Notes: generated from the sequence alone by a model not told the origin. A stretch of DNA of 32,000 nt from Wallemia ichthyophaga EXF-994 (GCF_000400465.1 NW_008806277.1:480001-512000), one strand, 5' to 3'. Counted from the stretch's first letter, positions 1 through 18,590 are shown. Program-made: numbers and translations.

Positions 1-348
1 GGTGTAATACCTCTTTGATGCTAGAATTTTTGTCAGCTGGACAAGGGAATGAGCGAGAATTTTTGGAAGACAATGACACTGACCAGCGTTTTGTCCACAT
101 CAAATCCATGAAGATGGCCATTGGATTTACAGCTTGAGTTTGTTAAATTCATTAAAATTAATATTCTCCAACCAGAGCAAACTCTAGGACTGCGTGTTAC
201 GAGTTTTGCGCATAGTAACAGCTGATGATCTAAGCCTTATAAGAAATCATAGTGGGCATGTTCTTGACGGTTTGAACACACTACATCTGACGTCTCCATA
301 ACAAACATTGTATCGGAATGGGCATTAAATAAGAATGATAAAAAGTCA

Positions 349-427
349 AGGTCCTAGCCGGATTCGAACCGGCGACTCCGGATGTCTACTTCAGAGACCG
401 ATGTGATGACCACTACACTATAGGACC
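349..427 (-). tRNA. tRNA-Gln(CTG) with a ~7-nt intron
   Basis: Minus strand reads GGTCCTA TA GTGTAGTGGTCATCAC A TCGGT CT CTG A [AGTAGAC] A TCCGG AGTC GCCGG TTCGAAT CCGGC TAGGACC. Acceptor stem is perfect, A and B boxes are present, it closely resembles yeast tRNA-Gln, and a TTTTT terminator follows. Confidence 0.92.
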
Positions 428-555
428 GGCTGAAGCTCCATTTTTTAAAGTGAACTATATTATTCACAAACAAATTAGAAATAAGGTTCAAATCGTGGAA
501 CTATAGCTCGTTTTCTCGGCTTAACTTAAAAAAAACCAACCATTTCTGCTTACCA

Positions 556-626
556 AGCTAGTCAAGAAATGCTTACAGTAGATTCAGCACTTCCCTCAAC
601 TTCTCCTGCTTTAAGAAGTATTGATG
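556..626 (+). repeat. Repeat X, copy A, 5' part (interrupted by the LINE at 627-1274)
   Basis: gctagtcaagaaatgcttacagtagattcagcac...tgctttaagaagtattgatg aligns by eye to the reverse complement of ~6570-6640 (gctagtcaagaaaagcttccagtaaattcagcac...tgctttaagaattatttatg). Confidence 0.85.
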
Positions 627-1274
627 AATATCTCTATGAAAATCATTCTCAGGCCGGCTCTCTCTGATTTCTTTAGACGTCTGCGTGAGCAACACACTGC
701 TCTCTTGAGAGTAAATGCACGTAGACTGCCAGGACCAACGTCGAAAGACGCAGAGAGAGAAGTGAGTAGGATGACTTTTACTCAGGGGGCTAATATGCTC
801 AACAAGTTTCCTCGTGGTATGTGAATTGTGGCCACCCAGATCCGCTCAGGCCACTTCCCTATTGCCAAGTCTTACCGATTCACTGTCCAAATCAACACTT
901 TGCAGCAAGCTCAGTGAAGTAGACAGTATCACACATAGGCTTTCTAGATGTAGGAAGTTCGATCAAACAAGGTTATCGTTGAGGAGGAAGATCTATGGAC
1001 TAGGGTTAAGGTTCGAGATAAAACATGCTTTCAAATGAGGAAGCTCTCAAAGCTTTCTATGAGCTCTTTAAAAAGTAGCTCATCACCCACCCGCGCGCCT
1101 CCGTTAGCTCCACGTAGTCACCTCCTCTTTTACGGCGCACGTGCCAAGAACCGCATTCATTTGAGTCCTTAAAATTGTCAGCTGCTAATGCACAAGAAAC
1201 CAAATAGGCGAAAATTATTATTCATTGTAACGCTTTTGACTATATACTATGATTTTTATCTATCTGTCTATCTC
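627..1274 (+). mobile_element. 5'-truncated, decayed non-LTR retrotransposon (Tad1/I-like LINE ORF2 C-terminus plus 3' UTR)
   Basis: Encodes ...PRGM*IVATQIRSGHF (a TQLRTGH-type motif), then in a shifted frame LCSKLSEVDSITHRLSRCRKFDQTRLSLRRKI (degenerate C-x2-C...H-x4-C knuckle), then SNEEALKAFYELFKK*. Ends in a (TATC)n-like tail at 1257-1274. Flanked by the direct repeat GAAGTATTGATG at 615-626 and 1275-1286. Confidence 0.85.
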
Positions 1275-1345
1275 GAAGTATTGATGGACGCAGTTTTAAA
1301 CATGTATCGGCTTAACGATATATTTAGATTTCATCATCATCATCA
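1275..1345 (+). repeat. Repeat X, copy A, 3' part ending in (CAT)n
   Basis: atggacgcagttttaaacatgtatcggcttaacgatatatttagatttcatcatcat matches the reverse complement of 6518-6575 (atggacgcagtttaaacatctatcgtcttaacaacatattcatatttcatcatcat). Confidence 0.85.
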
Positions 1346-1967
1346 CGGAACGATATGAAGACCCAGATTAGTATGCGTCTGCCGAACTTCTACCTGCCGC
1401 TCCCCTCCCACCAACAAGCTTCTGTAGTCTTAGAAGACATATCAAATAAAGTAAAGAACTTTTCCATCACTGAAAGCGGGATGGACTGGCTTTTTCCAAT
1501 TCTTCGCATGGGTCTATTATGATAAGGCCAGAGCGGACAAACCCAACCTCACCGAGTGGACAGTCAGCGGCAATGTAGACGAAAGCAGGAAGTCATGGCA
1601 CCTTTTCGACTCAAGTTAACCTATCAAGGCAACACGCGCGCTTTCAAGCACTTGGTAGCCGCCGGCTAACACCTCAAACAGCCCGATTCAATCAAATGCT
1701 TTAACCAAAAAAACTTTCCGCCCCTTCATATTACTCTTCAATCTTAGATTTGAGTCAGGCTAAGCCGATCATTACAATGCGTTGAATCCTTCACTTTTCA
1801 TAATTTGATTTTTAGCACATTTGCGACGAGTCAAAGCTTAGTAATTATACAATTTGTAAACATTAAGTATCCAGGAGTCTACTGATAACCAATGCGTCCT
1901 CATTCTTGATCCCTTGAAATCCTCCATCACATACTAGTGGACTAACACACAACTCGTCCCATTCCAG

Positions 1968-2276
1968 TCACTTACTTTTTTTTATTTCCTGTTTGTGTTG
2001 AGCTTCTTGCCAACAAGTATACAGCATCATATTTACCCGCTTAATCACTGCAGCGCGAGCTGATGGATTTTGGGAAGAATTTGCTGACGCCGTTGTTTGA
2101 CTGCTTGTTGTGCTTGCACTACCAATCACACTCGCACACCCGCTCATGCTGGCTTCAGCCTTGCTCGCCTTGATAAAAGCTTCCACCTCTTTAGCTATTT
2201 TAGCCAAATCCATCTCAACGACCTGCTTTTGCGGAAGCTCCACCTTCTGACCGACCTGTTGGGGTGTGATTCCCAT
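1968..2276 (-). other. Unassigned ORF (orphan exon or decayed gene)
   Basis: 102-codon ORF with a helical segment and an S/T/A-rich segment. It ends at a GTAAGT donor-like site with a CTAG acceptor about 40 nt on. No recognisable domain. Confidence 0.2.
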
Positions 2277-3377
2277 GAGTTTTTAGATAAAATTTGTCAC
2301 TGTACAAATTGCGTCGCATCCTCTTGTCTTAACGCTTGCCCCTACGCTAGCGCTGGACATTGACTTGTCGGAAAGCTGGCATTGAATAAAGTGTGTGGAG
2401 GTCCGAACAACTTAAAGCATTTTACTCATATTCTCTCTCCTCATGCAGAGAAGGTTGAAGAGGTTGATGAATACATATCTCCAGCTTAAGCTGAGACATT
2501 TGAGACTGAAGAAAGCTATGGACATGATTTGATAATGAGGAGTTGAAAAAGTATTTTGAATACGATATTCTTGAAGAAAACTACCCCAATTCACTCTCAG
2601 AGACCACCTCGTTCTCGGTAACAGTCATAACGGAAAGGACATAATGAAATCGATCCAAAGCAGCAAAAAGCTTCGCGTCTATCGGCGAGAAAAGGTAGGA
2701 TTTCTTTCGATCATCTCATACAGATCACCGCGAATAGGAGGGACCTTTAAAATGAGTCACAAGGCATACTTCACGTTGAGACTGAAGTTATGCAGATCCT
2801 TAGAAAGGCTGTGATTAAGACTGACCCTCCCCCAGCCAGTCGCTGGCCGTGATTGGCTTGATGGCGGTAATAGTGGAGAACATGAGAGTATTGAGATCGA
2901 AGAAGCAATTCTGTTGCTTGCTCAGAACTTCATTCATTTTCTCTAACGGCTCTTCCGAAAATCCAACATTGCGAAGTGAGAGACGTGTAGCCTTGTTTGT
3001 CCAAATAAAAATGGCTGCGTGTTATCTGTCTGATGATTCGTGATACCGCTACATTCCTCGTTCTTCTATTCAGTAATCGCCGCCGCTTCGAACGACATTA
3101 TGATAGTGGTAGCGCACTGAGAAGCGATAGAGTAACATGTGCGATATTTGAGGTATTCAAGGCAATTCAAATCATATCAAGGTACTTTAAAGAGCAGGAA
3201 GTGGATCAGCCATCGGAGCTTATTCTCTAACACACCCCACATCCCCTTTTCAAACTCAATAGCACAATTCCTGTATAAATTGAAATACTTCTCCTTGCAA
3301 ATAAAATATCTTCAATTGCATTCACATTCTTTGTGTTTACTGAGGTATTTAGCCGATATGAACGCGCGAATGGCTAC

Positions 3378-3436
3378 ACTAAAGGTGAAACTAAAAATGA
3401 GACTAAAATTATACTAAAAATGGCACTATAAAAGAA
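3378..3436 (+). promoter_or_regulatory. Hydrophobin promoter: five ~12-bp ACTAAAAATGRN units, the last containing TATAAAA (3427-3433)
   Basis: actaaaggtgaa / actaaaaatgag / actaaaattat / actaaaaatggc / actataaaagaa, about 55 bp upstream of the ATG at 3487. Confidence 0.55.
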
Positions 3437-3486
3437 TTACATGCTCTTGAGATAATACTACAATCAACTATTCGTCCAATCTCACT

Positions 3487-3848
3487 ATGATCGCTCAAAC
3501 CATCTTCGCTGCTGCTCTCGTCGCCTCTGTCTCAGCTGGCTGGGAATCTAAGACCGGCTCATGTAATACTGGAAAGCTCGCGTGCTGCGATACCAACAAG
3601 AAGGTCCAAAAGTCAACCGGTGAAGAATCAGGCCTCCTCCACACCGGTGACGTCCTCGACCAAGTCGCCATCCAATGCACTCAAATCCCTCTCCTCATCG
3701 GAGTAGCAATTGAGGGTTAGTGAAAACGCTCGCTTTATATCACAACTAACACCCCACAGACGAGTGCAAGAACACCCCAACCTGTTGTGAAGATGTCAAG
3801 GACGATGGTCTCGTCGGTATCAACTGCACTCCAATCCCTCTCATTTAA
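3487..3848 (+). CDS. Class I hydrophobin (105 aa, secreted), 2 exons
   Basis: Exons 3487-3715 and 3760-3848, with a 44-nt GTTAGT...CTAAC...CAG intron. Signal peptide MIAQTIFAAALVASVSA. Eight-cysteine pattern C-x6-CC-x29-C-x14-C-x5-CC-x12-C. Confidence 0.96.
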
Positions 3849-4337
3849 AGGCTGTTTGCCAGCATTTGTAGAATTCAACATTAGATAATACTTTATAAGC
3901 CCTAGTCACCTTGATGTCTCACTATCTCATCCATGCAAATACGCGAAGCACACTTGCGACTACACCACATATATCAAAGGATGCATGAATGACAGCAAAC
4001 ATCCTATACAAAAAAAATCTCTCAAACATTCTTGGTCCACATACTCATCCATTGAGCTGATGAAATATGAGAGTAGTGAGACAGTGCAGATGTCATTCAT
4101 AATCAATGCTTGAGCGTGTGTCCGGTAGCGGAGGTATGTAGCCGATTAATCAATTATGTGTGTCACAAGTTGATAATAATAGATAATGAATGGGTCTGAT
4201 TCATGGCAGTAATCAGCTATCCAAGAGTTATAAGCAGAAGCGGCTACTATACCACAGGCACGTAGGCAAGAGTATTTAGCAATGGTTTTACAATGAAATG
4301 GTGAGTCTTAGGGCCTAGAAATAGGGTTTTGTCGATA

Positions 4338-4634
4338 TTAATCAGTAAATTTCTGCTGTTTGTATGAAAGTCGGTAGTCCAACATCAGACCAAGATACTT
4401 CATAGTTTGAGATGATACTATTACCCGTTCATCCCAGAGAAGTGGATTGCTGTCTATCTTCAAGGGGTGTTTTGTGAATAACACATATTGGGTCTTTTTA
4501 ATGTCTAACGGTGTCGCATGCGATTCTGACCATTCGTCTGCTTCGTGTGAGTGGCTTTCCAGGAAGGATTTAGCCTCATTCGGTGTAATAGCTGCCGACA
4601 TTCATAGCAAATCGTCCCAAATGAAGGGAGGATG
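4338..4634 (-). mobile_element. Decayed non-LTR reverse transcriptase fragment (RT domains ~5-7)
   Basis: PFIWDDLL*MSAA...EWSESHATPLDIKKTQYVLF...SSQTMKYLGLMLDYRLSYKQ. Contains a degenerate YADD-like site, a W-x7-KT motif and the KYLG-x2-LD-x2-LS motif typical of LINE RTs, with an in-frame stop. Confidence 0.8.
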
Positions 4635-4698
4635 AGAATTTGATAGCAGATTTAAAAAGCAAATTACATACAATTTGATTTTAAAAGCGTAATATCAA

Positions 4699-4788
4699 GC
4701 ATTAATGGGGTAGTGGTAACCTCGATCGTTGCCATCTGGTCATTCACGAAATTTCGATCGGCCCCCGGTTCAATTCCGGGTTAATGCA
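4699..4788 (+). tRNA. tRNA-Gly(GCC) with a ~19-nt intron (4735-4753)
   Basis: GCATTAA TG GGGTAGTGGTAACCT C GATCG TT GCC A [intron] T CGATC GGCC CCCGG TTCAATT CCGGG TTAATGC A. All four stems pair and a T-rich terminator follows. Confidence 0.93.
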
Positions 4789-5306
4789 TTTATTTTTATG
4801 TTCTTCCATGCTCTTTCATCTTAAAGATGAACTTTTTTCGACCAGCTAGTTTTAATTAGTCATACGTTGGCTATCTCCGTAAGACGACAATGTTCGCTCG
4901 CAAGACCCTTTAAATCACAGTCAATTACTATTGCACAATGTGTTACTCACTCTATTGCACCACACCCCTTTCAAACAACATGCGCTAGAGTTTTTTTACC
5001 AAGTATTTTTACTGCTTGAGACATCTCAAAATATTACTTCCTACTCATATTACCCAAATTCAACCTCACCCACATTCAAACTCTTTTATCCACTGAACAA
5101 AGCGGCGGCGTTCTTGACAAAGTCACCAACCAAGTATGACATTCGGGTTAGTATTTTTAGTGGTGTGCTTTGAGTTGTGTTTAGGAACGAGCAATTGATA
5201 CAATTTCTAGTCAACATCACTTATTTTACCACACCTTTTCCTGCGTTTTATTCTATTTTTGACGCTTTTGCGCTCAGACATATCGTTTCTTAAACACAGT
5301 GGCGCC

Positions 5307-5340
5307 GACTTGAATGAGATTGAAGCTGGCGGAGGTACGC
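5307..5340 (+). repeat. Short coding-like repeat Y, copy 1 (DLNEIEAGG plus GT donor)
   Basis: gacttgaatgagattgaagctggcggag|gtacgc, similar to 6168-6201. Confidence 0.6.
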
Positions 5341-6167
5341 TTAAACGTCTTTGTTCAAAATTACACACGGTAATGTTAGGAGATGTGTTCAATCTGGACA
5401 CTAGGTCAGTAGAGTTGTAGACCTGAAGTAGCGGGGTCGGGTGATCCCAGTAGCCGAGGTGATCACTGGATCCCTGAAATTAAGTGTCCTTTAACTTATC
5501 GTCATCATAAAAAAAAAGGTGTCAAGAACAACAAGCAAGCACACGCCTTATAAATCTCTGCAATGACTAATAAAATAGAAACCATATATTCAGGAAGATT
5601 ACTGGCTATTACGTATTTTGGGTTTATTTATAATACGTTAATATGCCTGAAATAATACGATGTTTCATACCTGATTTTGACGGAGAAATAATAAACGGCA
5701 ATTGTTTCACAAGATATAACAGTTGTCCATTCGGTTACCCTAATCTTTGCAATGGAACACATCTGTTAAATGTCAATCTAGCAAATAATTGCACAGAGCC
5801 ATGTGATGTTAATGACTGAGGTAACGTATTTGGTTACAGGGAGAATACAGTTGGGACAAATCGTGGTGTGAATCAACGTCCAGCAACATTCTCAGTACAA
5901 AGCCTGGAAACCTGGTCTAAAGGAGAGAGAGCAAGTACTAAGATGAACCTATTAATTGTTGCGTTGGTCGCAAGCTTAATGTTAACAGAAGTGGTTGCTG
6001 CTTTCGAGTAGTAGCTGGAAAAAACCCTGTGTGCTATCGTATCGTCCACTCTACACGTTCCTTTCTTATAGCTTTTTTCGCTATCTTTCACCATCTCCTA
6101 TTCGAGCTGATAGACCTTCTGTTTGTCTTCAGCATAAGGCTCGCGTCTCTTCACACTTACCGGTAGC

Positions 6168-6201
6168 GAATTGAATGAGGTTGAGGCTGGCAGAGGTAAG
6201 T
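6168..6201 (+). repeat. Short coding-like repeat Y, copy 2 (ELNEVEAGR plus GT donor)
   Basis: gaattgaatgaggttgaggctggcagag|gtaagt. Differences from copy 1 are mostly synonymous or conservative in this frame. Confidence 0.6.
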
Positions 6202-6517
6202 CTACATGTTTCAGGGGGCTAAAGGCATACACGGGAGCCATAAGAGGTTAGCCTGCATTTATCACTTAAAGACATCATCATCGAATCCCTTTTTTATACC
6301 TAATAAATCGAAATGAAATAAAGTGTTAGCTGCTCACTGAGTCTCAAAGTTTTCACCAAGCTTGTCTTTGCTCCCAAATATTCAATCACTACCGATTTGA
6401 GTTAAAAACATTATATTGATTGATGATCTTAAAAAAAAAGACAGATCTGACTTATATCCAGAATCTAAAATTAATGATAGTGCAAGTAAATTAAAAAGGG
6501 TACTCTAATCCAAAATT

Positions 6518-6642
6518 ATGATGATGAAATATGAATATGTTGTTAAGACGATAGATGTTTAAACTGCGTCCATAAATAATTCTTAAAGCATGAGGAGTCA
6601 AAGGGGTGCTGAATTTACTGGAAGCTTTTCTTGACTAGCGTC
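6518..6642 (-). repeat. Repeat X, copy B (uninterrupted; empty site for the 627-1274 LINE)
   Basis: The minus strand aligns continuously with 556-626 joined to 1287-1345. It carries a single diverged copy of the TSD sequence (gaattatttatg) and a (CAT)n end. Confidence 0.85.
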
Positions 6643-6812
6643 GTAATTTCTAAGTTGTTGGTGGTTCTCAATTACATTAAACAACCTGATATCCTGCTGT
6701 GACTAATTACCACTGCGCTAATTGTTGTTAAACTGCCTCCCTTGCCTCGGCTGATATAATTAGCCGAGGCAGTTATGAGATTATAATAATTACATCAAGC
6801 CCGATTACAACA

Positions 6813-6893
6813 GCGTGGTTGGTCTAATGGTTATGATTCTCGCCTTCCATTAGTGATAGCGAGAGGCTATGGGTTCGATTCCCATACCTCGCA
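6813..6893 (+). tRNA. tRNA-Gly(TCC) with a ~8-nt intron (6850-6857)
   Basis: GCGTGGT TG GTCTAATGGTTATGAT T CTCGC CT TCC A [TTAGTGAT] A GCGAG AGGCT ATGGG TTCGATT CCCAT ACCTCGC A. One U:U mismatch in the acceptor stem; TTTTT terminator. Confidence 0.88.
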
Positions 6894-7086
6894 ACCTTTT
6901 TGCTTTTGTATTGGCTTTTCCAAATTTTTTCTATTCCAAGATGACACAAATCAAAAGCGTCTAATTAAGTAAAAATATAGTGCATGTAAACATGTATAAG
7001 TAAATTTGTGTATACAAAAACTAAAGAGAGTAAATTTTCGAAACAAATGAAACAAATAAAAATGTCCATATTTGTATGATCGTCCA

Positions 7087-10000
7087 TCAATTCTGGGGCG
7101 AATGAGTGTAGAAGCTTTGGTATGATTGGGAGTGCATATCAGGGCTTCCAAACTGGTTGTGGTGGTTGTGATTATGATTTTGAGGCGAAGGTGTTAGATG
7201 GTGGGGGTACGAAGACTGGGGCGACATTTGTGAATACTGTGAGTACGGTGATTGAGGGGACATGGCCATAGGTTGCGAAGGGGACATTGTCATGTTCATG
7301 CTCATACTCTGAGAAGGACTGCGATGAACGCCTGCACCTGCAACTGCACCGCCTTGCTGCTGCTGGTGGTACTGCCACATGGACTGCTGGAAGGCTTGCT
7401 GCGCAGCCATCATCGCCTGGAAGAAGGCAGTCTAGGGGTGGAGTTAGAAAAATGAGAGGGAAGTGGTACGATACTTGCCTGATTACCCATTGCGCTTGGA
7501 TCCATTGGTGGCATGCCCTGCATACCTTGCATACCTTGCATACTACCAGGCGCACTTTGCGTGTTACTAGGGACACCCATCCCCATCGGCATCTGCATTC
7601 CCATTCCCATTGGCATCTGCATGCTCGGCATCATGTTCGGTATGCCCGGCGCGCTCTGCGTGTTTTGCATGTTTTGCATAGGAGGAGACATCTGCGGCGG
7701 AGGAGACATTTGACGCGTATGCGAGCGTGAATGTGAGTGTGCGTAAGGGTTAGGGTGAGGGTTAAATTGAGAGTGAGAGTGAGAGTGCGAATGGGAAGAC
7801 GAGAGTGAGCTAGGGTGGGGATACGCGCGATTATCCTGCACCCCATACACACTCCCCTCCCGGCCGAGCGGCGAATGAGGGAGTTGAGAGCCAGTGTGGG
7901 AAAGCGTGCGCGTGTGGCCTTGAGCGTGAGAGTGAGAGTGGGAGTGGCGGAGCGAAGGTGGTCTGCTGTACGACACGTGCGACGTATTGCTTCTAGCTAT
8001 GGGCGACACAGGCGAGCCTGCCTGAAGACTGGCTGGCTTAGGTGCGGGAGGAGCCGGAGGCGAGGGGGGAACTGGTGAGGAGAGAATTGGTGGTGGTCGC
8101 GAGGGCATGTGCGGCGTCCTTTCGTTATCTTCCACCTCCAATGGCTGAGTGCGGTTAAGGTACTGGTCTGATGTTGAGGCGTTTGCAGATGCGTTTAGTG
8201 ACGTCGGGTTGACATTCAGATCAAAATCAACATCTGTGTTTGCTTCGCCTCTACGTTTGCCACCTCCACCTTCGTCGTCGCTGTCGTAATCATCGTAATC
8301 CGAGTAGTCGTTGTATGTGTTCTGTGAGTACTTGGATGCAATAGAGCCGTCGTTATAAGCACTTTGCACGCTTTGTACGCTCGGCAAGCCTTCTGAATAG
8401 GGTGTATTGGGGATGGAGTAGTTTGTGTGGTTTTCGTAAGGCTGATGATTTGAGTAGCCTGAGTGATTCGTGTGGATTGGGTAAGGGATTACGTGTTGAT
8501 CGAAAGCCGCGCTATTGATGCTCTGGCGGGAGTGAGGGGCGTGTGAGTGTGAAACTGAGTGTGAGTGTGAAGGTGGAAGTAAACCACCGCCGTCATCAAG
8601 CTCATCACTATCACTCCCTCCTAGAGACAATTTGCGACGTAGCTCCTGTGCAGCGCGCGCAGTCTGTTCTTCTACACTTCCCGTGCCATTAGTCCCAGTA
8701 CTGGCAGGCGTTTGGAGCGATCCTGTTGAGATGGAACTGAAGGGTGTTCTGACGCCAGCCTCACGATCGTGAGCTCCCGCGCCCGTGTCCACTACTTGAG
8801 CAAATTGACCAGATTGACCAACGTCACCCTCAAGTTCATCCCTCTCAATTTCACCCCCGTTCTCGCTCTCGCTCTCGCTCACCCGATCGCGCGCAAAGAC
8901 ACCATGGAAACTGGGAATGGCTGTGGAGGCGGTTGATTTGCTGCCTGTGTTGTGCATATTTCCTGCTTCTGCACTGCCCACGTCGCCATAAACTTGTCCA
9001 CCTTCACCCATGCCAATTGGCCCGAGGGGCTCAATCCGTGGGAGGCTGGGGGAGGTGTCCGTATGCAAGGTATTGTTGTGTGTGTTACGTTTGTTGCTTG
9101 TGTAGCTTCTGTAGCTATGATAGCTCCTATTTTCTGGTAAGAGCGTGTCATTTTCGCTATCCCTAGTGTGCTCCTTGAGGCTGTGTTCGCTCGCACCGCT
9201 GTGTCCAGCCAGCAGGGGTTCACTGAATGCATTGACACCGTCAACGCCGTTACCGCCTGCGCCAATAGAGGGAATGCTAGGTGGGCGGGCCAACCTAGTC
9301 TTCATCTTATCCGGCGACACTTGCCCGCCTGGTTGCAGTGAGACAGGGCGGGTAGATGGAACGCCGTCGCTGCTGTCGTCGCTGGCCGCTTTGCCCCTGT
9401 TTCCTTGCTGCGATGGCGGCAGCATGCGATCGTGCAGGATCGCGAGCAGGTTCGAACGTACCTTGAACCCCCTCTTCTCATGCACATCCGCCCCACGCGC
9501 CAGATCCATGTCGAGAAACAGCCGTCCACGCTGTGGGCCGATTGGGTAGGCGAAAAAGAGCGAGCGCGGATCGCGCGGGTCGAAGCTGTACGCCTTAGGT
9601 CGGCCGTACAAGTGGAAGCTGTCGTGTATCCCGACCAGCCAGTTCAACATCTCGCTCCAGGTGTGCGAGGAGGACATGCTTGAGGTGGCACTAGAGTTGG
9701 TGTTGGTTAAACTGCTCCCCGTGCTGCTGCGCGCTTTGCTCTTGCGCTTTTCACCGACATCCGGCATGAGCAGACACCACCCATCTTCGCGCTGCACTGA
9801 CTGGCCTAGCTGGTCTACGTAGCCATTCTCCTCTCCATTTTCCAATCTGCCGTCTATCTTCATCAGCCCCGAGTGCGAAATTAGCTCCGTGCGTTCGGGA
9901 AATATCGCATAGGCTTGCGTGGCGAGAGTCATGGTGTAGATGGGTCTTGTGCTGCTCTTAACGTTCTTCTGGGCGTAAAAGGATGCGATGGCGCTGTAGT

Positions 10001-10948
10001 TAGGCGGTGAGGGAAAAGCGTGTCTGTGTGAGTGAGACTGTGAGCTGGTGGCAGTGTTTGAATTTGATCCACCGAAGAAGGATTTCTTCCGCTCAGAGGG
10101 ACGGTAATTGGTTAACACAAGCCAGTATCGCTGCCACTTGGCTGTGCCACTGAAACGAACCTTGACCCACCCCTCCATCTTGCCCTTTACGAGCGGGGAG
10201 TGAGGTTCTATGAAGGGCTGTCTGCCGGAGTTGCCGGGCAAGTTGCTTCTCTGGAGGATGCGCAGGAGGTGTCCTGTGTAGAGCTCTTCCAACCGCTTCT
10301 TCTCCCAGGCCGAGAGACGAATAGCAGTGACGACTGTGTGCAGCGTGTGCTTGTCCTGCGCCACGTACTCCTGTCTGTTCAGACCGGCGTAGTTGAGCGC
10401 AAAGACGTGATCGACGGTGCGCTGGTACTCGGGGGGCGGCACGGCGACGAGAATGCTTCCGACGAGTTCAGTGTGGCTGTCTGAGATGTTGATGTCTATA
10501 TAGATGTTAGATGTGCTATTGAACTGCCTAAAAATCAAATAAAGCACCCACAATTCGGCGGAATCGCTTGACCTGCAGCGGCAGCCGACTCCATACCCTT
10601 GCGCATCCACACATTGAGGACATTACCAATCAACTTGACGAACACTCCCTGCAGCTCACCGCGGCTGTCGCCCGTCTTGAGTGGCTTCCCGTCGGCGTTC
10701 TGCACCGTACGCTGGGCGAGATAGCCACTGAAATACACCTTGCGCGAGTGGGCGTGTACTAGCGTTAGCAGCGGCTGTAGCTCGCCCGTTGGTGCATTAC
10801 GCGATTCAACATCGAGATGACTTCCAAACGATTCGTTGGGCTCTGCGTCTGCGGATGCTACACGTCGATGGTGCGTGTCTGGCGCGTCTGTTATATCGGC
10901 AGATGTCGTTTTCGTCGGCATCAGCGAGAACCGTTTCGATTTATCCAT
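7087..10948 (-). CDS. Skg3/Caf120-like PH-domain protein with a long low-complexity S/H/P/Q/M-rich C-terminus, 3 exons
   Basis: N-terminal PH-like KVYFSGYL...VFVKLIGNVLNVW, then WVKVRFSGTAKWQRYWLVL and QAYAIFPER...LMKIDG motifs recalled from the Skg3/Caf120 family. Introns at 10496-10551 (GT-AG) and 7432-7478 (GC-AG). Confidence 0.8.
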
Positions 10949-11744
10949 CTCGCCGTGGTGAGTGTGAGCGCGTAAGAGGGGAGATGGGAGATGGCGCGTT
11001 GAGAAGGGTTGAGATGTTGGAAGAGCAGTGCAAAGTATTTGGCGGTTATTGTGAGAATATTAAGAGCAGTTTATAGGCGTGGTGGTTTGTGGTGGCTTGG
11101 GGTGATCTGCACAGCATATTTACAGACTGACAGCGTGGGCCGAAATTGAGTTTGGATTGTGCTCCAGAAAAGCTGCCGAGAATGGAGGAAGTCTGTCGCT
11201 CGGACCCAATTCCAGGCACGGCAGGTGAAACAATGAGTATATTGAATGACTCTATAAGTACTGCAATCAAGCCGATAACAATGCGTCCGAGTATTCATCT
11301 ATGCGCCATACATCTAAACATACACCTGCTAGAGGTGAATGTATCGGTGGATGATGATTACCGAACAATTGTCTTGTGAGCGATAGACACGGCAAAGGCG
11401 CAGAAGGAGCACAAGTAAGTTAACTTGGAGGAAAATGGGAAACACTGGGCACGAGGAGCACAAGTATCACAAGAATCAAAGGTATCACGCACTGCTACGC
11501 CCTCTCTAGCAAGAAAGCTACGTGATGTAACTGCCCGTAATCCTACTCGCCTTCAACAAACATGGCATGGGCGTACACGGGGTGATAACGACTAGATTCT
11601 TCGTCAGCATCACACTCCTAGCTACCGCGTTCGTCGTGCTTGTACACCATGTAAAGATGAACAAGGCAGCAATCTCAGCCTCAGTTTTAATTCCATATGT
11701 CTAGATATGTAGATGTCTTGCAGTCTTGTGACATGAGCTGCGAG

Positions 11745-11800
11745 CTTTGACTTGATTTGACCTGATTTGACCTGATTTGAGATGATTTGAGATGATTTGC
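11745..11800. repeat. Minisatellite, five 10-bp units NNTGATTTGA
   Basis: cttgatttga cctgatttga cctgatttga gatgatttga gatgatttgc. Confidence 0.85.
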
Positions 11801-12272
11801 CAGGCTATTTATACCTGAGATGCACACTACTATGCATCACATAATGTGATCACGTAATTTAGTAATTTGATTGCTTACTTAGTTGCAGACGATCGACGAC
11901 CACCGATCACCCATCACGCACGCCAGAAACGGGGTACGTCAACCTCACCACGCTCTCCCTACTCACAAGGACACCATCAAGAGAATGCGCTTCAAGGTAC
12001 CACTCTGCTTTGTGGATCTGGTGGTTGTGCTTTGTGAGAGACGCAGAGATGCCCCATACTCAATCACGGTCTTCTACGTCGGCTACATCGACCCTAAAGG
12101 TGATCTGTATGGATGGCAAGTGCAGGAGTCTCCAAGATGGGATGGGAAACACAGCGATACGCAGCGAGATGAGCGAGTGTAATGATGGCTTGGATTAATG
12201 CTACATGGGCTTCTATATAGTAGTAGTTGTAGTGTTGATGGTGATTTTGATGATTTTGGTAAGACAACGCCG

Positions 12273-13416
12273 TCACGACCGTTGATAGCAAGCGTAGGCG
12301 ACTGTGCATGAAGAGAATGAGCGTGATTGTCCAACAAATTGCCTCCCACTCACGATCATAACCCGAGAATTCATAATTGATGCGATCAGTGCGGGTGTAA
12401 TTCTCGAGGAGGCTGTTGGAGAATTCGTTTGAGGGCTTGATATCGATTTCCTCGTTCTCGCCCACACCCACGAACAGGGTAGAAGAGAGCTTACCCGGGT
12501 TGAAAATATGCACGACGCGCTGAATGAGATGGCGCAATTCATTGCTGCTCGCATAGCTGGCATTAGTTTCAAAAGATGCATAGCTGATGCCGTCTTCGGG
12601 CGTGACGTGTATCGTGAAATAACGATCACTGCTGTGTGAGTCGGACCAGGTAGCGTTGGCTGAGTAACCACACGGGGTGAATAAAAACGCGTCGAGCGCT
12701 ATATTGGGAAAGAGAGTGGAGATACCCAGACTGTCTGAGAGACGTTTACCCGCTTCGTGGCCAGTTATGTTCAAGTCGCTGAGAAAGAAAGCGCGACAAT
12801 TGTCTGGATGGAGGTTTGTCATAAGAATTTCGAGGGTTATGTCAGGAGAAGACAAGTGTGGGGTTCTGCTAAGAGCCTTTTCATCGTGCTCATCATGCTT
12901 GCTGGACATATAGAGCAGCCAGTGATCACCATTCATTCTGCCAACAGTGTAGGCAGAGCCAGGGCCAAAGAACTTGTCGAGAACTTGGACCTCCTGCTGC
13001 CAGTGTCTGTGAGGGCCTCTCTGGCGCTCGGGGAACATGAAAGCCTTGCGAGAGTAAAAGACATGTTTTGGGTTCAGGCCACAGCGATCCTTGGCAATAT
13101 CAAGAATTCTCTCCAAACCAAGCAGCAGAGTGGTTGTGCCGCATGTCTTGAGGATAAGGCGATGAGGAGCGATGAAGAGGGAAGACTCGGAGAGGAGATA
13201 AGCGTCGATGGAGTCACCGATAATAACGCTGAGAATCTGACAGTTGACTAGCTGCAGCATATTCTCCCACTCGCTTCTGCTGACTTTACGCAAGCCACCG
13301 TCACCACGGAAAGCCCCACAATCAAACCAAATCTCTAGCAGCTTCTCTGGTCCTTCGAATGGCCCACTGGCATCATCTTCCTGCTCATGAATTATTTTCG
13401 TCGTCGTCGTCGTCAT
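12273..13416 (-). CDS. SPE2: S-adenosylmethionine decarboxylase proenzyme, 2 exons
   Basis: FEGPEKLLEIWF, YLLSESSLF (E/S self-cleavage site), KTCGTT, PCGYSAN and TIHVTPE motifs. Intron 12302-12353 restores the C-terminus FSGYDLAYACYQRS*. Confidence 0.96.
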
Positions 13417-15205: not shown

Positions 15206-16141
15206 CTAACTCTCATCGACTTTAACACCCTTCCAGACAGAAGCAACACCAAGAGTGAGATCTCTATAACCGCGTTTGTTAGGAAGATGAAAACCAGCGT
15301 CCCGGAGCATGTTAGCGAACGTAGGCTGATCAGGAAAGCGTTCAATAGATTCAACGAGGTATTGGTACGATTCTCTATCGCCAGCGACGAGGTGGCCAAT
15401 AGCAGGGATCAAGTTGAACGAGTAAGTGGAGTAGAGGGAAGCGAGGAGAGGCTGAGACACTTTACCAAATTCTAACACAGCGAAAACACCGCCTGGTTTG
15501 AGCACACGATGGGCTTCGCGTATGACAGTGTCAATGTGTGTGCAATTCCTTATACCAAAAGCGATAGTGTAAAGGTCGACAGAGTTGGAGGGGATGTTCT
15601 CGAGACACTCTGCATTGGCTAGCTTGAACTTTATCTGGTCAGTGTTGAAGTAGAAGGATTTACGAGCACGTTTTTCACCCTCAGCGAGCATCTGTGGATT
15701 AACATCCATCACTGTGACATTTACACTCCTGTCAGCGTGCTTGTCTTTGGCATGGTCGAGTATTCTGTGGGCAATGTCGCCAGTACCGCCAGCCATATCG
15801 ATGCAGTTGAGACCGGTGCCGCCGAATTTACGGGCGTATTCCTCAGTAACGCCGGCTTCGGAGATAGTCTTTATAGAGTGGGGGTTGAGTGAGCCGACAA
15901 AGTCATCCTTCCAAAGCCTGTGAATGCCAAAGGACATGACGTCGTTCATAATATCATAAGCAGGCGCAACGGAGGAGAAGACATTTGAGACTAAATCCTC
16001 CTTCTTATCCTGATCAACGGATTTAAATCCGAAATGAGTTTTGTTTGAGTGGTTTCTGATCTGTGTGGTGACTGCTATTGGCGTGTAGATTGACTTATTC
16101 AATAATTTTAATTTTGAAATTCCACGCGTCATTGAGGACAT
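15206..16141 (-). CDS. COQ5: Ubiquinone biosynthesis C-methyltransferase (UbiE family), mitochondrial
   Basis: THFGFKSV, VFSSVAPAYDIMNDVMSFGIHRLWKD, DMAGGTGD, YTIAFGIRN and YLVESIERFP motifs. Presequence-like N-terminus. Confidence 0.96.
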   Translation of the reverse strand: MSSMTRGISKLKLLNKSIYTPIAVTTQIRNHSNKTHFGFKSVDQDKKEDLVSNVFSSVAPAYDIMNDVMSFGIHRLWKDDFVGSLNPHSIKTISEAGVTEEYARKFGGTGLNCIDMAGGTGDIAHRILDHAKDKHADRSVNVTVMDVNPQMLAEGEKRARKSFYFNTDQIKFKLANAECLENIPSNSVDLYTIAFGIRNCTHIDTVIREAHRVLKPGGVFAVLEFGKVSQPLLASLYSTYSFNLIPAIGHLVAGDRESYQYLVESIERFPDQPTFANMLRDAGFHLPNKRGYRDLTLGVASVWKGVKVDES

Positions 16142-16199
16142 GATGGTTGTCGTGGTTCAGGCGTATAACATTCTTGAACCAGAACGTCCACCATCTAAT

Positions 16200-18590
16200 A
16201 TGTCATCTTGGTCTTCAAAGCCTGTTAACAAGAATGAGCAGATCTCAGTTCCACCTGCGAGTGACTTGAAATCTACTTGGGCGTTTCTACAAGATGGAAT
16301 TGAGCAGATAATGACTAGACTGAGAGATGGAATGACGTATTCCAAGTATATGAGCTTATATACGACATCATATAACTACTGTACAAGCTCAAGAATGAAT
16401 ACAGCCACTGAACCACTTGGTACCGGTAGAACTGCAGGTGCCAATCTAATGGGCTCTGATTTATACTCAAATCTAATAAAATACTTGACAAGCCACCTGA
16501 AGCAAGTCAAGGAGCTCTCAGATCCTCTTTATGACTTGCAGCTTCTCCAATTCTATGCCGCTGAATGGGATAGATTCACGACCGCTGCTTCTTACGTCGA
16601 TCGCTTATTCTCTTACCTCAACAAACACTGGGTTAAACGTGAGAAGGATGAAGGTAGAAAGAACGTTTATAACGTCTACACTTTAGCCCTCGTTCAGTGG
16701 AGATCTTGCTTCTTTTTACCCATTCAAGACCAGCACTCTAAGCTCATTTCCGCACTCTTAAAGCAAATTGAAAAACAAAGAAACGGTGAGACTGTCGAAA
16801 CCACGCTCATAAAAAAGGTTATCGAATCTTTAGTCTCTCTCGGCCTAGATGAGGTTGACAGTAGCAAGCAAAATTTAGATATATACCAAGATCATTTTGA
16901 ATCGCCTTTCATTCAATCCACTCTTCTTTACTATAAATCTCTTTCTGACGCTTTCGTTGCTGCTAATAGCGTCACAGATTACCTTAAAATGTCTCAAGAT
17001 AGGCTAGCTGAGGAGGAAGCACGCGTTGATGTCTACCTCCACGCTTCATCAAGGAAATCTCTCATCGGTGCATGTGAAAAAGCTCTCGTTTCCGATCACA
17101 TTGATATTATCAAACATGAATTTGTTCATCTCCTAGAATTCGATAAGGAGGATGACCTTTATCGCATCTACACCCTCCTAGCACGTGTAGACGCTCTCGA
17201 TTTCCTTCGTAAGAAGTTCGAAGATCACGTCAAGCGTACTGGCTTGGCTGCTATTGAAAAGGTTTATGGTAATGCCGAGGCTTCCAAACAAGGCCCTAAG
17301 AAGGAGTCCGACAAGGGTGACCTCGATCCTAAAGCTTACGTTGATGCTTTACTCGACGTACATACAAAGTGTTCTCTTACCGTCAAGAATGCTTTTAAAG
17401 CCGAGTCTGGTTTTTCTGCTGCACTCGATAAGGCTTGCAGAGAGGTCGTTAACAGAAACGCTGCTACTGGTACATCCACCACTAAATCTCCCGAGCTTAT
17501 CGCTAAACACTCCGACTCTCTTCTTAAGAAGGGTAACAAGCAAACTGAAGAGGCTGAGCTTGAAGATGCCCTCAACCAGGTCATGACCCTGTTCAAGTAT
17601 ATAGAAGACAAGGATGTATTCCAGAAATTCTACACCAAAATGCTCGCCAAGCGATTGGTCAGTGGACTTTCAGCATCCGATGATGGTGAGTCATCTATGA
17701 TAGGCAAGCTGAAAGATGCATGTGGATTCGAATACACGAATAAGCTGCAGAGGATGTTCACGGACATCAGTATATCAAAAGAGCTGACAAATTCGTTCAA
17801 CGAGCGCATGACGCAGACACACGACGCGTCTGAACTAGCAGTCGATTTTGATGTTAAAGTGCTAGCAACCAATTTCTGGCCGATGAACCCACCCAACACG
17901 CAATTCAACATGCCAGCGGAGCTCCAACCGACGTACGAGCGGTTCAACAAGTACTACAACAGCCAGCACTCTGGCCGGAAGCTGACGTGGCTATACAATA
18001 CATCTAAGAACGAGCTCAAGACAACACACCTCAGCCAGCCATATATTTTCCTCTGCTCTACATTCCAGCTCGCGATACTGGTGCAGTACAACGAACACGA
18101 CTCGCTCCGCTACGATGAACTCAAGGCCGCTACTAACTTGAACGACAACTTGCTCAAACAGACGCTGGCTACACTCGTCAAATCTAAAGTCCTCCTGCAG
18201 GACGAAGACACTTACGATCTCAACTTTAACTTTAAGAGTAAGAAAATTCGCGTGCAGCTCAACCAACCTATCAAGGCGGACGTTAAGCAGGAGTCGAGCG
18301 ATGTGCTAAAGACGGTGGACGAGGACCGCAAATTTGAAATTCAAGCTGCGGTAGTGAGAATTATGAAGGCGAGAAAGACGCTTAAATACCAGAATCTCAT
18401 CCAAGAAGTCATTTCCATTGTTCAGTCGAGATTCTCTCCCAAGGTGTCTGATATAAAGAAGGTGAGACGTGGTGTGGTATGTGAGTAAAATTAGCTAACA
18501 CGATCTCAGGCTATTGAAGCATTGCTCGAAAAAGATTACCTCGAGCGGAATCTCGAAGCTGGACGAGACGTCTTCAACTATGTGGCCTGA
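16200..18590 (+). CDS. CUL1: Cullin-1 (SCF scaffold, Cdc53 orthologue), 2 exons
   Basis: YLNKHWVKRE, DKDVFQKFYTKMLAKRL, CGFEYTNKLQRMF, GRKLTWL and the neddylation motif IVRIMKARK. Intron 18462-18509 gives the end AIEALLEKDYLER...FNYVA*. Confidence 0.96.

What the first reader, a model, noticed from the sequence alone, without database searches (positions are those of the whole stretch)
349..6893. All three tRNA genes have an outward-pointing non-LTR-like relic just upstream: possible tRNA-targeted LINE system
Seen: tRNA-Gln (minus, 5' end 427) has repeat X plus a nested LINE on the plus strand starting ~130 bp upstream. tRNA-Gly-GCC (plus, 4699) has an RT fragment on the minus strand starting ~65-70 bp upstream. 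tRNA-Gly-TCC (plus, 6813) has repeat X on the minus strand starting ~170 bp upstream. In every case the relic's truncated 5' end faces the tRNA 5' end. Known: this geometry is the signature of Dictyostelium TRE5 non-LTR elements, which dock on Pol III factors. In fungi, tRNA targeting is classic for LTR elements (Ty1, Ty3), and I do not recall it described for fungal LINEs. Inference: non-LTR families here may use Pol III genes as safe havens in a genome with almost no intergenic space. Caveat: n=3, and the shared orientation alone has about a 1-in-8 chance.
Basis: partly seen in the sequence, partly recalled or inferred. Interest (0 to 1): 0.8.

Follow-up and report, generated by a model that had tools for sequence, protein, structure and literature searches.

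The report
LINE relics upstream of Wallemia tRNAs
In the very compact genome of the salt-loving fungus Wallemia ichthyophaga, three neighbouring tRNA genes each have a dead copy of one retrotransposon family 60-120 bases upstream, pointing away, and related Wallemia loci show the same layout, which suggests the first fungal LINE that homes to tRNA genes as the Dictyostelium TRE5 elements do.

Summary
The window is W. ichthyophaga EXF-994 (KE007227.1, about 480-512 kb). It has three intron-bearing tRNA genes.

"Repeat X" is not a separate repeat. It is the last ORF2 codons, the 3'UTR and the (TCA)n tail of the same LINE family as the RT fragment. A near-full-length copy in another W. ichthyophaga strain (L003) shows this at 87-90% nt identity. 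The family encodes APE-RT-RNaseH.

All three relics are 5'-truncated. Their 5' ends face the tRNA 5' ends at 60-88, 68-83 and 89-118 nt. A second, more divergent LINE is nested in X1 with a 12-bp target-site duplication.

Four further loci were fetched by RT homology alone. Three have a tRNA gene upstream of the LINE in the same divergent orientation, at 81 nt, at 943 nt, and at 2.2 kb (about 104 nt from a decayed tRNA duplicate). The fourth has a permuted tRNA-Arg-like sequence at the LINE 5' end. Eighty control loci of distant relatives (479 kb) hold no tRNA.

Best reading: TRE5/NLTR-B-like targeting upstream of tRNA genes, evolved independently in Wallemiomycetes (confidence about 0.55). 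The main rival is passive survival in tRNA/TE islands. No genome-wide test was possible, and some copies do not fit.

The parts
349..427 (-). tRNA gene, read as Gln(CTG) with a short intron. ARAGORN's intron-free parse calls it Phe(GAA). A T5 terminator lies just downstream.
   Evidence: Rfam tRNA 56.1 bits. ARAGORN. Flanks.
487..626 (+). X1, left part. This is a 5'-truncated relic of the Wallemia LINE (last ORF2 codons plus 3'UTR). Robust homology starts at about 515 and weak homology at 487. Its 5' end lies 60-88 nt from the tRNA-Gln 5' end, head-to-head.
   Evidence: blastn 535-626 vs L003 12237-12329. Alignments.
627..1274 (+). Nested, 5'-truncated relic of a second, more divergent LINE. 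It holds the ORF2 C-terminus with a decayed CCHC motif and a 3'UTR ending in a TATC-like repeat. It is inserted in X1 in the same orientation and is flanked by the 12-bp TSD GAAGTATTGATG (615-626 and 1275-1286).
   Evidence: tblastn to L007 ORF2 aa 1129-1259, E 2e-12. tblastx to L002 and L003. The TSD was read and is single-copy in X2 and L003.
1275..1345 (+). X1, right part. This is the end of the LINE 3'UTR, with the (TCA)n tail at 1331-1345.
   Evidence: 94% identity to L003 12318-12387. Alignment.
3487..3850 (+). Hydrophobin gene (2 exons). It is context only and is the one clear protein gene in the 7-kb tRNA/TE stretch.
   Evidence: Pfam PF01185, E 3e-17.
4342..4631 (-). Internal RT fragment of the same LINE family, running from the YADD box to the end of RVT_1. 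It equals L003 10432-10708 and has no detectable 3' end. Its 5' end lies 68-83 nt from the tRNA-Gly(GCC) 5' end, head-to-head.
   Evidence: blastn 86.6% over 277 nt to L003. tblastx E 1e-26 to L002. phmmer. Alignment to P0002, P0003 and P0006. No 3' end found.
4699..4788 (+). tRNA-Gly(GCC) gene with a 19-nt intron.
   Evidence: ARAGORN with introns. Missed by the Rfam tRNA model.
6515..6724 (-). X2, a 5'-truncated relic of the same LINE (last ORF2 codons, 3'UTR and a (TCA)3 tail at 6518-6526). Robust homology runs to about 6695 and weaker homology to 6724. Its 5' end lies 89-118 nt from the tRNA-Gly(TCC) 5' end, head-to-head.
   Evidence: blastn 90% over 162 nt to L003 12224-12385. Alignments.
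6731..6771 (.). Imperfect 40-bp palindrome (CTGCCTC..GCCTCGGCT gatataatt AGCCGAGGCAG) between X2 and the tRNA. Its origin is unknown, and it may have lengthened the X2-tRNA gap.
   Evidence: Read in the sequence.
6813..6893 (+). tRNA-Gly(TCC) gene with an 8-nt intron.
   Evidence: Rfam tRNA 52.5 bits. ARAGORN with introns.

Best explanation
The window holds a cluster of three active-looking tRNA genes. A copy of one Wallemia LINE family integrated upstream of each one and later decayed.

The family has two ORFs. ORF1 carries CCHC knuckles. ORF2 carries APE, RT, RNase H and a C-terminal CCHC. The 3'UTR is about 160 nt and ends in (TCA)n.

I infer that the element's integration machinery is directed to chromatin bound by the Pol III apparatus (TFIIIB/TFIIIC on the tRNA gene). 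It would nick about 60-120 bp upstream of the mature tRNA 5' end, in an orientation that puts the LINE 3' end distal and its often truncated 5' end proximal to the tRNA. This is functionally the same solution as Dictyostelium TRE5-A and Polysphondylium NLTR-B. In a genome that is about three-quarters coding, such sites are safe havens.

Later insertions then pile into the same sites and push older copies outward. Examples are the second LINE nested in X1 and the Ty3-like elements in related loci.

Shown: family identity, truncation, orientation, distances, and recurrence at six different tRNA genes in at least two Wallemia species.

Inferred: that the association comes from targeting at integration rather than from selective survival, and that Pol III factors are the cue.
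For: 1. One family. The RT relic and both X copies map onto one contiguous element in L003 at 87-94% nt identity.

2. Geometry in the window. In three of three cases the 5' end faces the tRNA 5' end, at 60-88, 68-83 and 89-118 nt.

3. Independent loci fetched by RT homology only.
- L014: tRNA-Cys(-) at 274-357 (Rfam 56 bits) and LINE(+) from 439, a gap of 81 nt.
- L008: LINE(+) from 3016, about 104 nt from a decayed duplicate of the tRNA-Ala(AGC) 5' end plus its upstream flank. The intact tRNA lies at c732-826, with a Ty3-like gag between them.
- L004 (W. mellicola): tRNA-Ala(TGC) at c1777-1883 and LINE(+) from 2826.
- The three LINE copies differ in truncation point (reference positions 3284, 2666 and 2225) and sit next to different tRNAs, so they are independent events.

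4. Controls. 80 metagenome loci of 23-31% identical relatives (479 kb) and L017 contain no tRNA. Fisher's exact test on 3/4 vs 0/33 assessable loci gives p = 5e-4.

5. Genome expectation. With about 135 tRNAs in 9.6 Mb (11.55 kb of tRNA, PMC3849046), the chance that at least 3 of 4 loci have a correctly oriented tRNA within 2.2 kb is about 1.5e-5.

6. TRE5 elements lie 40-54 bp and NLTR-B 39-64 bp upstream of tRNA genes, and TRE5 sits in the opposite transcriptional orientation to the tRNA (PMC5911963, PMC5006619).
Against: - No genome-wide census was possible, and the sample is small. The window cases were chosen post hoc.
- Distances rest on where homology fades. An objective TSD search was not significant, so exact integration sites are unknown.
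- The spacing of 60-120 nt is looser and longer than TRE5's.
- Several copies do not fit. L014 X(-) at 1929-2067 has no tRNA in the 570 bp beyond its 5' end. L004 X and X' flank a poor pseudo-tRNA-Leu in tandem orientation. L009, a related subfamily, has no tRNA within 1.8 kb.
- The full-length copy in L003 has no ordinary tRNA gene within 6.9 kb upstream. It has only a permuted tRNA-Arg-like sequence with an encoded CCA, which may be a retro-copy.
- All these loci are TE nests (LINE plus Ty3-like elements plus tRNA), so regional co-accumulation contributes.
- The control loci come from other fungi with unknown tRNA density.
Confidence: 0.55

Rival explanations
1. Passive accumulation. The LINE integrates more or less at random. 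In a genome that is about 75% coding, only copies landing in the few gene-poor islands survive, and tRNA genes, Ty3-like elements and other junk also sit there. The tRNA association would then be a survivorship and regional effect, not targeting.
For: The first 7 kb of the window is AT-richer (38-44% GC against 46-57% in the rest) and nearly gene-free. Every related locus is a nest of LINE pieces, Ty3-like fragments and tRNAs. Some copies in these nests do not face a tRNA (L014 X, L004 X and X'). The genome is 1.67% repeats and about three-quarters coding (PMC3849046).
Against: Survival in an island does not predict a gap of 60-120 nt, or the same side and orientation at six different tRNA genes. 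Even when restricted to the 7-kb island, the window pattern has p of about 7e-7. The nearest-to-tRNA position is occupied by the LINE in the window and in L014.
Confidence: 0.3
2. Self-nesting or tail targeting. The LINE preferentially integrates into existing copies or into (TCA)n-like microsatellites, through annealing of its RNA tail to the nicked target. Copies would then cluster wherever a first copy landed, and tRNA proximity would be incidental.
For: A second LINE is nested inside X1 in the same orientation. In L004 a short X, a pseudo-tRNA and X' lie in tandem, followed further downstream by a long LINE copy in the same orientation. Zorro3 of Candida targets poly(A) tracts in this way (PMC7175516).
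Against: The three window relics of the main family are each alone next to a different tRNA. They are not in arrays, and no (TCA)n tract lies at their 5' junctions. The nested element is a different family and was inserted mid-3'UTR, not at the tail.
Confidence: 0.08
3. Segmental duplication. A single ancestral tRNA-plus-relic module was copied locally, so the three cases are not independent.
For: X1 and X2 begin at nearly the same position of the element (L003 12177-12179) and are 82-86% identical to each other.
Against: The three tRNAs are different genes. The spacers between relic and tRNA share no similarity. The third relic is a different part of the element (RT, not 3'UTR). Self-BLAST finds no other duplicated sequence in 1-7200 apart from a 32-nt exon-like motif.
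Confidence: 0.03

Closest known systems
Dictyostelium discoideum TRE5-A (tRNA gene-targeted non-LTR retrotransposon)
   Same: It is a non-LTR element found upstream of tRNA genes in the opposite transcriptional orientation, in a compact genome. It has two ORFs and an APE-type endonuclease, and many copies are 5'-truncated (PMC5911963, PMC5006619).
   Different: TRE5 sits 40-54 bp upstream and the association is strict. Here the gaps are 60-120 nt and some copies do not fit. The review lists TRE5 under the L1 group, with APE-RT-zinc finger, no RNase H and an oligo(A) tail. The Wallemia element has RNase H, a C-terminal CCHC and a (TCA)n tail. The host is a fungus, not an amoebozoan. The ORF1-TFIIIB interaction is untested.
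Polysphondylium pallidum NLTR-B and D. purpureum NLTR-A
   Same: Both have APE, RT and RNase H domains. NLTR-B lies 39-64 bp upstream of tRNA genes in a TRE5-like manner (PMC5006619). They are an example of independent evolution of the same preference.
   Different: No sequence comparison was made here. [quoted passage not shown] NLTR-A inserts 2-6 bp upstream. Both hosts are dictyostelids.
Fungal I/Tad1-type LINEs (APE-RT-RNaseH ORF2, CCHC-knuckle ORF1)
   Same: The domain order matches: PF14529, PF00078, PF00075, a C-terminal C..C..H..C motif and an ORF1 with CCHC knuckles. The nearest database relatives are fungal, from Rhynchosporium, Austropuccinia, Trametes and Fusarium, at 23-31% identity.
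   Different: The reviews and searches I read describe no tRNA association for these fungal LINEs. Known fungal LINE preferences are poly(A) tracts (Zorro3), subtelomeres (Zorro1/2) and telomeres (Cnl1) (PMC7175516). Eighty loci of distant relatives here had no tRNA. Clade placement by phylogeny was not done.
Ty3 and Ty1 (S. cerevisiae) and other fungal LTR elements targeted to Pol III genes
   Same: They are fungal retroelements that use tRNA upstream regions as safe havens. Ty3-like fragments share the same Wallemia loci (L008 gag at 1593-2570, PF19259).
   Different: They are LTR elements that integrate with an integrase, not by target-primed reverse transcription. Their spacing differs: Ty3 integrates at the transcription start site, and Ty1 up to about 1 kb upstream.

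Membership tests
APE-type non-LTR (LINE) retrotransposon | ORF2 with an apurinic/apyrimidinic-type endonuclease followed by a reverse transcriptase | tested here: met
   The window relic keeps only the RT segment from the YADD box to the end of the RT domain. Its closest relatives P0001 and P0020, and the contiguous L003 copy, have PF14529 and PF00078, with PF00075 as well in P0020. Pfam run directly on the decayed window translations found nothing.
APE-type non-LTR (LINE) retrotransposon | 5' truncation with a retained 3' end that ends in a simple-repeat or A-rich tail | tested here: met
   X1 and X2 keep the last 170-210 nt and a (TCA)n tail. The same tail is present in L003, L004, L007, L008 and L014. 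The RT relic has lost its 3' end.
APE-type non-LTR (LINE) retrotransposon | Target-site duplication flanking the insertion | tested here: inconclusive
   The nested LINE has a clear 12-bp TSD. For X1, X2, L003 and L014 the best candidate repeats are no better than shuffled controls.
tRNA gene-targeted non-LTR elements (functional class: TRE5, NLTR-B) | Copies lie at a narrow, fixed distance upstream of tRNA genes | tested here: inconclusive
   The gaps are 60-88, 68-83, 89-118, 81 and about 104 nt. One is 943 nt with intervening sequence of unknown origin. The spread is wider than TRE5's 40-54 bp, and the boundaries are set by homology, not by TSDs.
tRNA gene-targeted non-LTR elements (functional class: TRE5, NLTR-B) | Fixed orientation relative to the tRNA gene (head-to-head for TRE5) | tested here: met
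   All six RT-bearing or 5'-junction copies next to real tRNA genes are divergent: three in the window, plus L014, L008 and L004. Short X copies in L004, L008 and L014 do not follow the rule.
tRNA gene-targeted non-LTR elements (functional class: TRE5, NLTR-B) | Most or all genomic copies are associated with Pol III genes | not testable with these tools
   No whole Wallemia genome could be scanned, only 20-kb pieces around exact protein matches. A partial sample gave 3 of 4 independent loci, against 0 of 33 assessable controls.
tRNA gene-targeted non-LTR elements (functional class: TRE5, NLTR-B) | An element protein binds TFIIIB/TFIIIC, and targeting is lost when the B box is mutated | not testable with these tools
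   This needs experiments. ORF1 has no Pfam domain.
TRE lineage of Dictyostelium (phylogenetic membership) | ORF2 with APE-RT-zinc finger and no RNase H, plus an oligo(A) tail | tested here: not met
   The Wallemia family has an RNase H domain (PF00075 in P0020 and P0021) and a (TCA)n tail. It is therefore not a TRE family member, and any similarity is functional.
Fungal I/Tad1-type LINE | ORF1 with CCHC knuckles, ORF2 with APE-RT-RNaseH, and a C-terminal cysteine motif | tested here: met
   Pfam domains. Three C-x2-C-x4-H-x4-C-like motifs were read in L002 ORF1, and a K-C-x2-C...H-x4-C motif at the ORF2 C-terminus. No phylogeny was made, so the clade name stays provisional.

The most novel reading that the evidence does not exclude
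Wallemiomycetes carry a LINE lineage of the APE-RT-RNaseH, I/Tad1-like type. It actively homes to a window about 60-120 bp upstream of Pol III-transcribed tRNA genes in a fixed head-to-head orientation. This would be the first Pol III-targeted non-LTR retrotransposon in fungi, and an origin of this strategy independent of the dictyostelid elements (TRE5, NLTR-A/B).
Probability: 0.5. Interest if true: 0.75.

Novelty: new variant of a known kind. Interest (0 to 1): 0.62.

Why it matters
Targeting of tRNA genes by non-LTR elements is so far documented only in dictyostelid amoebae. In fungi the known Pol III-targeted elements are LTR retrotransposons that use integrases.

A fungal LINE with the same habit would be a further independent invention of this safe-haven strategy in a compact genome. 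It arises in a different LINE group with different domains. It would therefore be a natural comparison for asking how target-primed reverse transcription is steered by Pol III factors.

There is also a practical point. Wallemia tRNA genes carry introns of 8-35 nt, and default tRNA finders and the Rfam tRNA model miss them. TE-tRNA associations in such genomes are easy to overlook.

Tried and rejected
- Pfam on the conceptual translations of the two relics gave no hit.
- The word-indexed protein search with the stop-containing RT translation found no candidates.
The exact 87-aa ORF worked.
- Default ARAGORN and Rfam at gathering threshold found no tRNA in L003-L006. This was misleading: ARAGORN with introns then found tRNAs in L004-L006, L008 and L014.
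- A JGI metagenome scan with a conserved 26-mer of X gave no match.
- Ten window ORFs were looked up by exact sequence to reach neighbouring DNA or other strains. None is in the collection. The sequence upstream of window position 1 and the same locus in other strains therefore stayed out of reach.
- The TSD search for X1, X2, L003 and L014 gave candidate repeats at about -70 to -80, but these were no better than shuffles. I dropped them as evidence.
- A search for a LINE 3' end below the RT relic (3851-4345) found nothing above shuffled controls.
- L002, L007, L009-L013, L015 and L016 are element-only or very short contigs and say little about flanks.
- I considered and rejected the idea that X is a conserved tRNA promoter element or a separate repeat family, because it is contiguous with ORF2 in L003. 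I also rejected segmental duplication of a tRNA-plus-X module.

Full report
**Origin of the window.** A 311-aa protein encoded at 15206-16141(-) is found, by exact sequence, on NCBI record KE007227.1 of assembly GCA_000400465.1. Window coordinate plus 480000 gives the record coordinate. From my own knowledge this assembly is Wallemia ichthyophaga EXF-994. Later hits named W. ichthyophaga and W. mellicola agree with that. The published genome is 9.6 Mb, about three-quarters coding, 1.67% repeats, and has 11.55 kb of tRNA genes, which is roughly 135 genes (PMC3849046). The first 7 kb of the window is AT-richer than the rest. It holds only one clear protein gene, a hydrophobin at 3487-3850 (Pfam E 3e-17).

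**The tRNA genes.** Rfam finds tRNAs at 349-427(-) and 6813-6893(+) (56 and 52 bits).
- Default ARAGORN finds all three genes but mis-reads the anticodons, because the genes have introns.
- With introns allowed it gives Gly(GCC) at 4699-4788 with a 19-nt intron, and Gly(TCC) at 6813-6893 with an 8-nt intron.
- The first gene is parsed as Phe(GAA) without an intron. Its acceptor, D and T arms match yeast tRNA-Gln as I remember it, and a CTG anticodon with a short intron fits.
- Each gene is followed by a T-run and preceded by an A/T-rich block near -20 to -35.
- A fourth ARAGORN call at 16145-16267 lies in a cullin coding region. I take it as a false positive from the lowered threshold.

**The relics.**
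- Repeat X is real.
- The 648-bp insert at 627-1274 is bracketed by the 12-bp direct repeat GAAGTATTGATG. That sequence occurs once in X2 and once in the full-length element, so the duplication was made by the insertion.
- The insert's three-frame translation shows the usual LINE ORF2 C-terminus (..IRSGHFP.., then C-x2-..-H-x4-C). It matches L007 ORF2 aa 1129-1259 (E 2e-12).
- The minus-strand ORF at 4338-4601 reads ..WSESHATPLDIKKTQYVLFTK..KYLGLMLDYRLSYKQQ, preceded by F-I-W-D-D.
- Pfam and the word-indexed search failed on these decayed translations. An exhaustive phmmer search with the 87-aa ORF found 18 proteins, the best at E 4e-17. These carry Exo_endo_phos_2 plus RVT_1, and the longer ones also RNase_H.

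**X and the RT fragment are one family.** A profile of the closest fragments retrieved annotated proteins of W. mellicola (P0002) and W. ichthyophaga (P0138). The contig carrying P0138 is L003, from assembly GCA_004918065.1. It holds a near-full-length element of about 5.4-5.5 kb.
- ORF1 is intact (6996-8297, 435 aa).
- ORF2 (8371-12224) is broken by several stops and two frameshifts.
- The 3'UTR ends in (TCA)5 at 12388.
- Window 4342-4616(-) matches L003 10432-10708 at 86.6%.
- Window 6515-6675(-) matches L003 12224-12385 at 90%.
- Window 1275-1345 matches L003 12318-12387 at 94%.
- Window 535-626 matches L003 12237-12329 at 76%.

X is therefore the 3' terminal 170-210 nt of the same LINE. 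Other elements (L002 and L007, from ENA metagenomes) have intact ORF1 and ORF2 of 1279-1289 aa, and L007 has the same ...GATTTCATCATCAT end. The nested insert is only 35% identical at the protein level and ends in a TATC-like repeat, so it belongs to a second family.

**Geometry in the window.** Alignment to L003 puts the X1 5' boundary at 515 (robust) to 487 (weak), and the X2 boundary at 6695 (robust) to 6724 (weak). Both alignments start at L003 12177-12179. The RT relic reaches 4616 by nucleotide homology and about 4631 by the YADD-box reading.
- The gaps to the tRNA 5' ends are 60-88, 68-83 and 89-118 nt.
- In every case the element points away from the tRNA.
- The RT relic has no recognisable 3' end, so it has been cut down after insertion.
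- Within the 7-kb island alone, three 5' ends falling 60-120 nt upstream of three different tRNAs in this orientation has p of about 7e-7 under random independent placement. This number is post hoc.

**An independent test set.** I could not scan a whole Wallemia genome. I could fetch contigs that encode proteins found through RT homology, which says nothing in advance about tRNAs. Default tRNA searches found nothing in the first of these, L003-L006. ARAGORN with introns did find tRNAs in three of the four independent loci.
- **L014** (Logan SRR6399599): a tRNA at c274-357 (Rfam 56 bits), which I read as Cys(GCA) with a 10-nt intron. A LINE(+) copy starts at 439, 81 nt away and head-to-head. 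It is truncated at reference position 3284 and carries its own (TCA)5 tail.
- **L008** (ENA metagenome): tRNA-Ala(AGC) at c732-826 with a 22-nt intron, a Ty3-like gag at 1593-2570(-), and LINE(+) from 3016 (reference 2666). Just left of the LINE, 2890-3016 is a 76-78% identical second copy of the tRNA 5' part and its upstream flank. The LINE 5' end therefore lies about 104 nt from a decayed tRNA-Ala 5' end.
- **L004** (W. mellicola; L005 and L006 are the same locus in other strains): tRNA-Ala(TGC) at c1777-1883 with a 35-nt intron, and LINE(+) from 2826 (reference 2225), 943 nt away and head-to-head. A 26-nt poly(A) run lies in the gap directly 5' of the LINE.
- **L003**: see the section on the permuted tRNA-like sequence below.

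The truncation points and the neighbouring tRNAs all differ, so these are separate integration events. Together with the window, six different tRNA genes have this family upstream in the same orientation.

**Controls and numbers.** A profile of four full-length ORF2s retrieved 80 JGI metagenome loci of 23-31% identical relatives, 479 kb in all. Intron-aware ARAGORN finds no tRNA in any of them. Another relative on an 83-kb contig (L017) has none within 5 kb.
- About 33 control loci have at least 1.9 kb upstream of the ORF2 start, so their 5' flanks can be assessed.
- Fisher's exact test on 3/4 against 0/33 gives p = 5e-4.
- From the W. ichthyophaga tRNA density, the chance that at least 3 of 4 loci have a correctly oriented tRNA within 2.2 kb is about 1.5e-5.
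- The controls come from other fungi, so this is indicative only.

**What does not fit.**
- L014 also has a short X(-) at 1929-2067, with no tRNA in the 570 bp beyond its 5' end.
- In L004 an X copy ends about 10 nt before, and an X' variant starts about 12 nt after, a poor tRNA-Leu-like sequence (136-216). All three are in the same orientation.
- L009, a subfamily at about 65% identity, has 1.8 kb of upstream sequence without a tRNA.
- An objective search for target-site duplications gave nothing better than shuffled flanks, so exact integration points are not established.
- Every locus is a nest of LINE, Ty3-like and tRNA sequences. A 150-nt repeat next to the L003 LINE tail recurs beside the Ty3-like gag in L008 and beside X in L014.

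**The permuted tRNA-like sequence in L003.** About 120 nt left of the ORF1 start codon, on the opposite strand (6878-6803), a weak Rfam YrlA hit (31.5 bits, E 0.003) turned out to be a circularly permuted tRNA.
- It reads tRNA positions 38-73, then CCA, then C, then positions 1-37.
- Re-joined in normal order, the two halves fold into a perfect tRNA-Arg(ACG) cloverleaf.
- The break is exactly at 37/38, and the CCA is encoded.
- Either this is a retro-copied tRNA captured at the LINE 5' junction, or it is a permuted tRNA gene.
I lean to this reading.
- In either case it is not an ordinary tRNA gene, so the only full-length copy gives ambiguous support.

**Comparison with known systems.**
- TRE5 elements lie 40-54 bp upstream of tRNA genes in the opposite orientation.
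- NLTR-B (APE, RT, RNase H) lies 39-64 bp upstream.
- TRE3 lies downstream of tRNA genes (PMC5006619, PMC5911963).
- The Wallemia family works like TRE5 and NLTR-B in side and orientation, with a somewhat longer and looser spacing.
- It is not a TRE by descent, because it has RNase H and a (TCA)n tail.
- Its architecture is that of fungal I/Tad1-type LINEs.
- The literature I could search lists fungal LINE preferences only for poly(A) tracts, subtelomeres and telomeres. The 2018 review of Pol III targeting lists no fungal non-LTR element.
- That search covers open-access papers only.

**Verdict.** A Wallemia LINE family is associated with the upstream side of tRNA genes, more strongly than chance or regional clustering easily explains. 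Targeting at integration is the best explanation (about 0.55). Passive survival in tRNA/TE islands remains a serious rival (about 0.3), and the decisive genome-wide census is still to be done.

Noticed in passing
L003 6803-6878 (minus strand); W. ichthyophaga GCA_004918065.1 SPOQ01000034.1: A circularly permuted tRNA-Arg(ACG) sequence: 3' half (positions 38-73), then an encoded CCA, then C, then the 5' half (1-37). It lies directly beside the 5' end of the full-length LINE and antisense to it. Re-joined, the halves give a perfect cloverleaf. It is either a retro-copied tRNA captured at the junction or a permuted tRNA gene, which I have not seen reported for fungi.
   Followed up: partly
L004 4700-4930 (W. 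mellicola) and window 3487-4631: In both species a fragment of this LINE lies next to a hydrophobin gene. In L004 the LINE ORF2 sequence (..GCTTACATGGTGACAACG) runs straight into the hydrophobin signal-peptide coding region. The likely start codon therefore lies in LINE-derived sequence. In the window the hydrophobin faces the other way, about 490 bp from the RT relic.
   Followed up: partly
L004 136-372 and L008 1-128: X' is a variant of the LINE 3' end with a different central part. It occurs at two or more loci with different flanks. In L004 it follows a decayed tRNA-Leu-like sequence by 12 nt in the same orientation. This layout is what a tRNA-derived SINE with a LINE-derived tail would look like. 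Several short X copies start at the same element position (TTACGAC.CTAGTCAAG).
   Followed up: partly
L008 1593-2800; L003 12393-12540; L014 1850-1933: A Ty3-like LTR retrotransposon (gag, PF19259) and a repeat of about 150 nt associated with it sit in the same tRNA/LINE nests. In L008 they lie between a tRNA-Ala gene and the LINE. Wallemia may therefore also have a tRNA-associated LTR element.
   Followed up: no
window 5306-5337 and 6167-6198: A 32-nt motif is repeated at 87.5% identity (..TTGAATGAG.TTGA.GCTGGC.GAGGTA.G, reading ..LNE(I/V)EAG.G followed by GT). It looks like the end of a small exon in two paralogous short genes between the tRNAs.
   Followed up: no
window 4699-4788; L004 1777-1883; L008 732-826: Wallemia tRNA genes with introns of 19-35 nt are missed by the Rfam tRNA model, even at E up to 1, and by default ARAGORN (which also mis-read the anticodon of the window gene). 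They are found only with the intron option. tRNA counts and TE-tRNA analyses in such genomes can be badly biased by this.
   Followed up: yes
window 6731-6771: An imperfect 40-bp palindrome lies between X2 and tRNA-Gly(TCC). Its origin is unknown.
   Followed up: no
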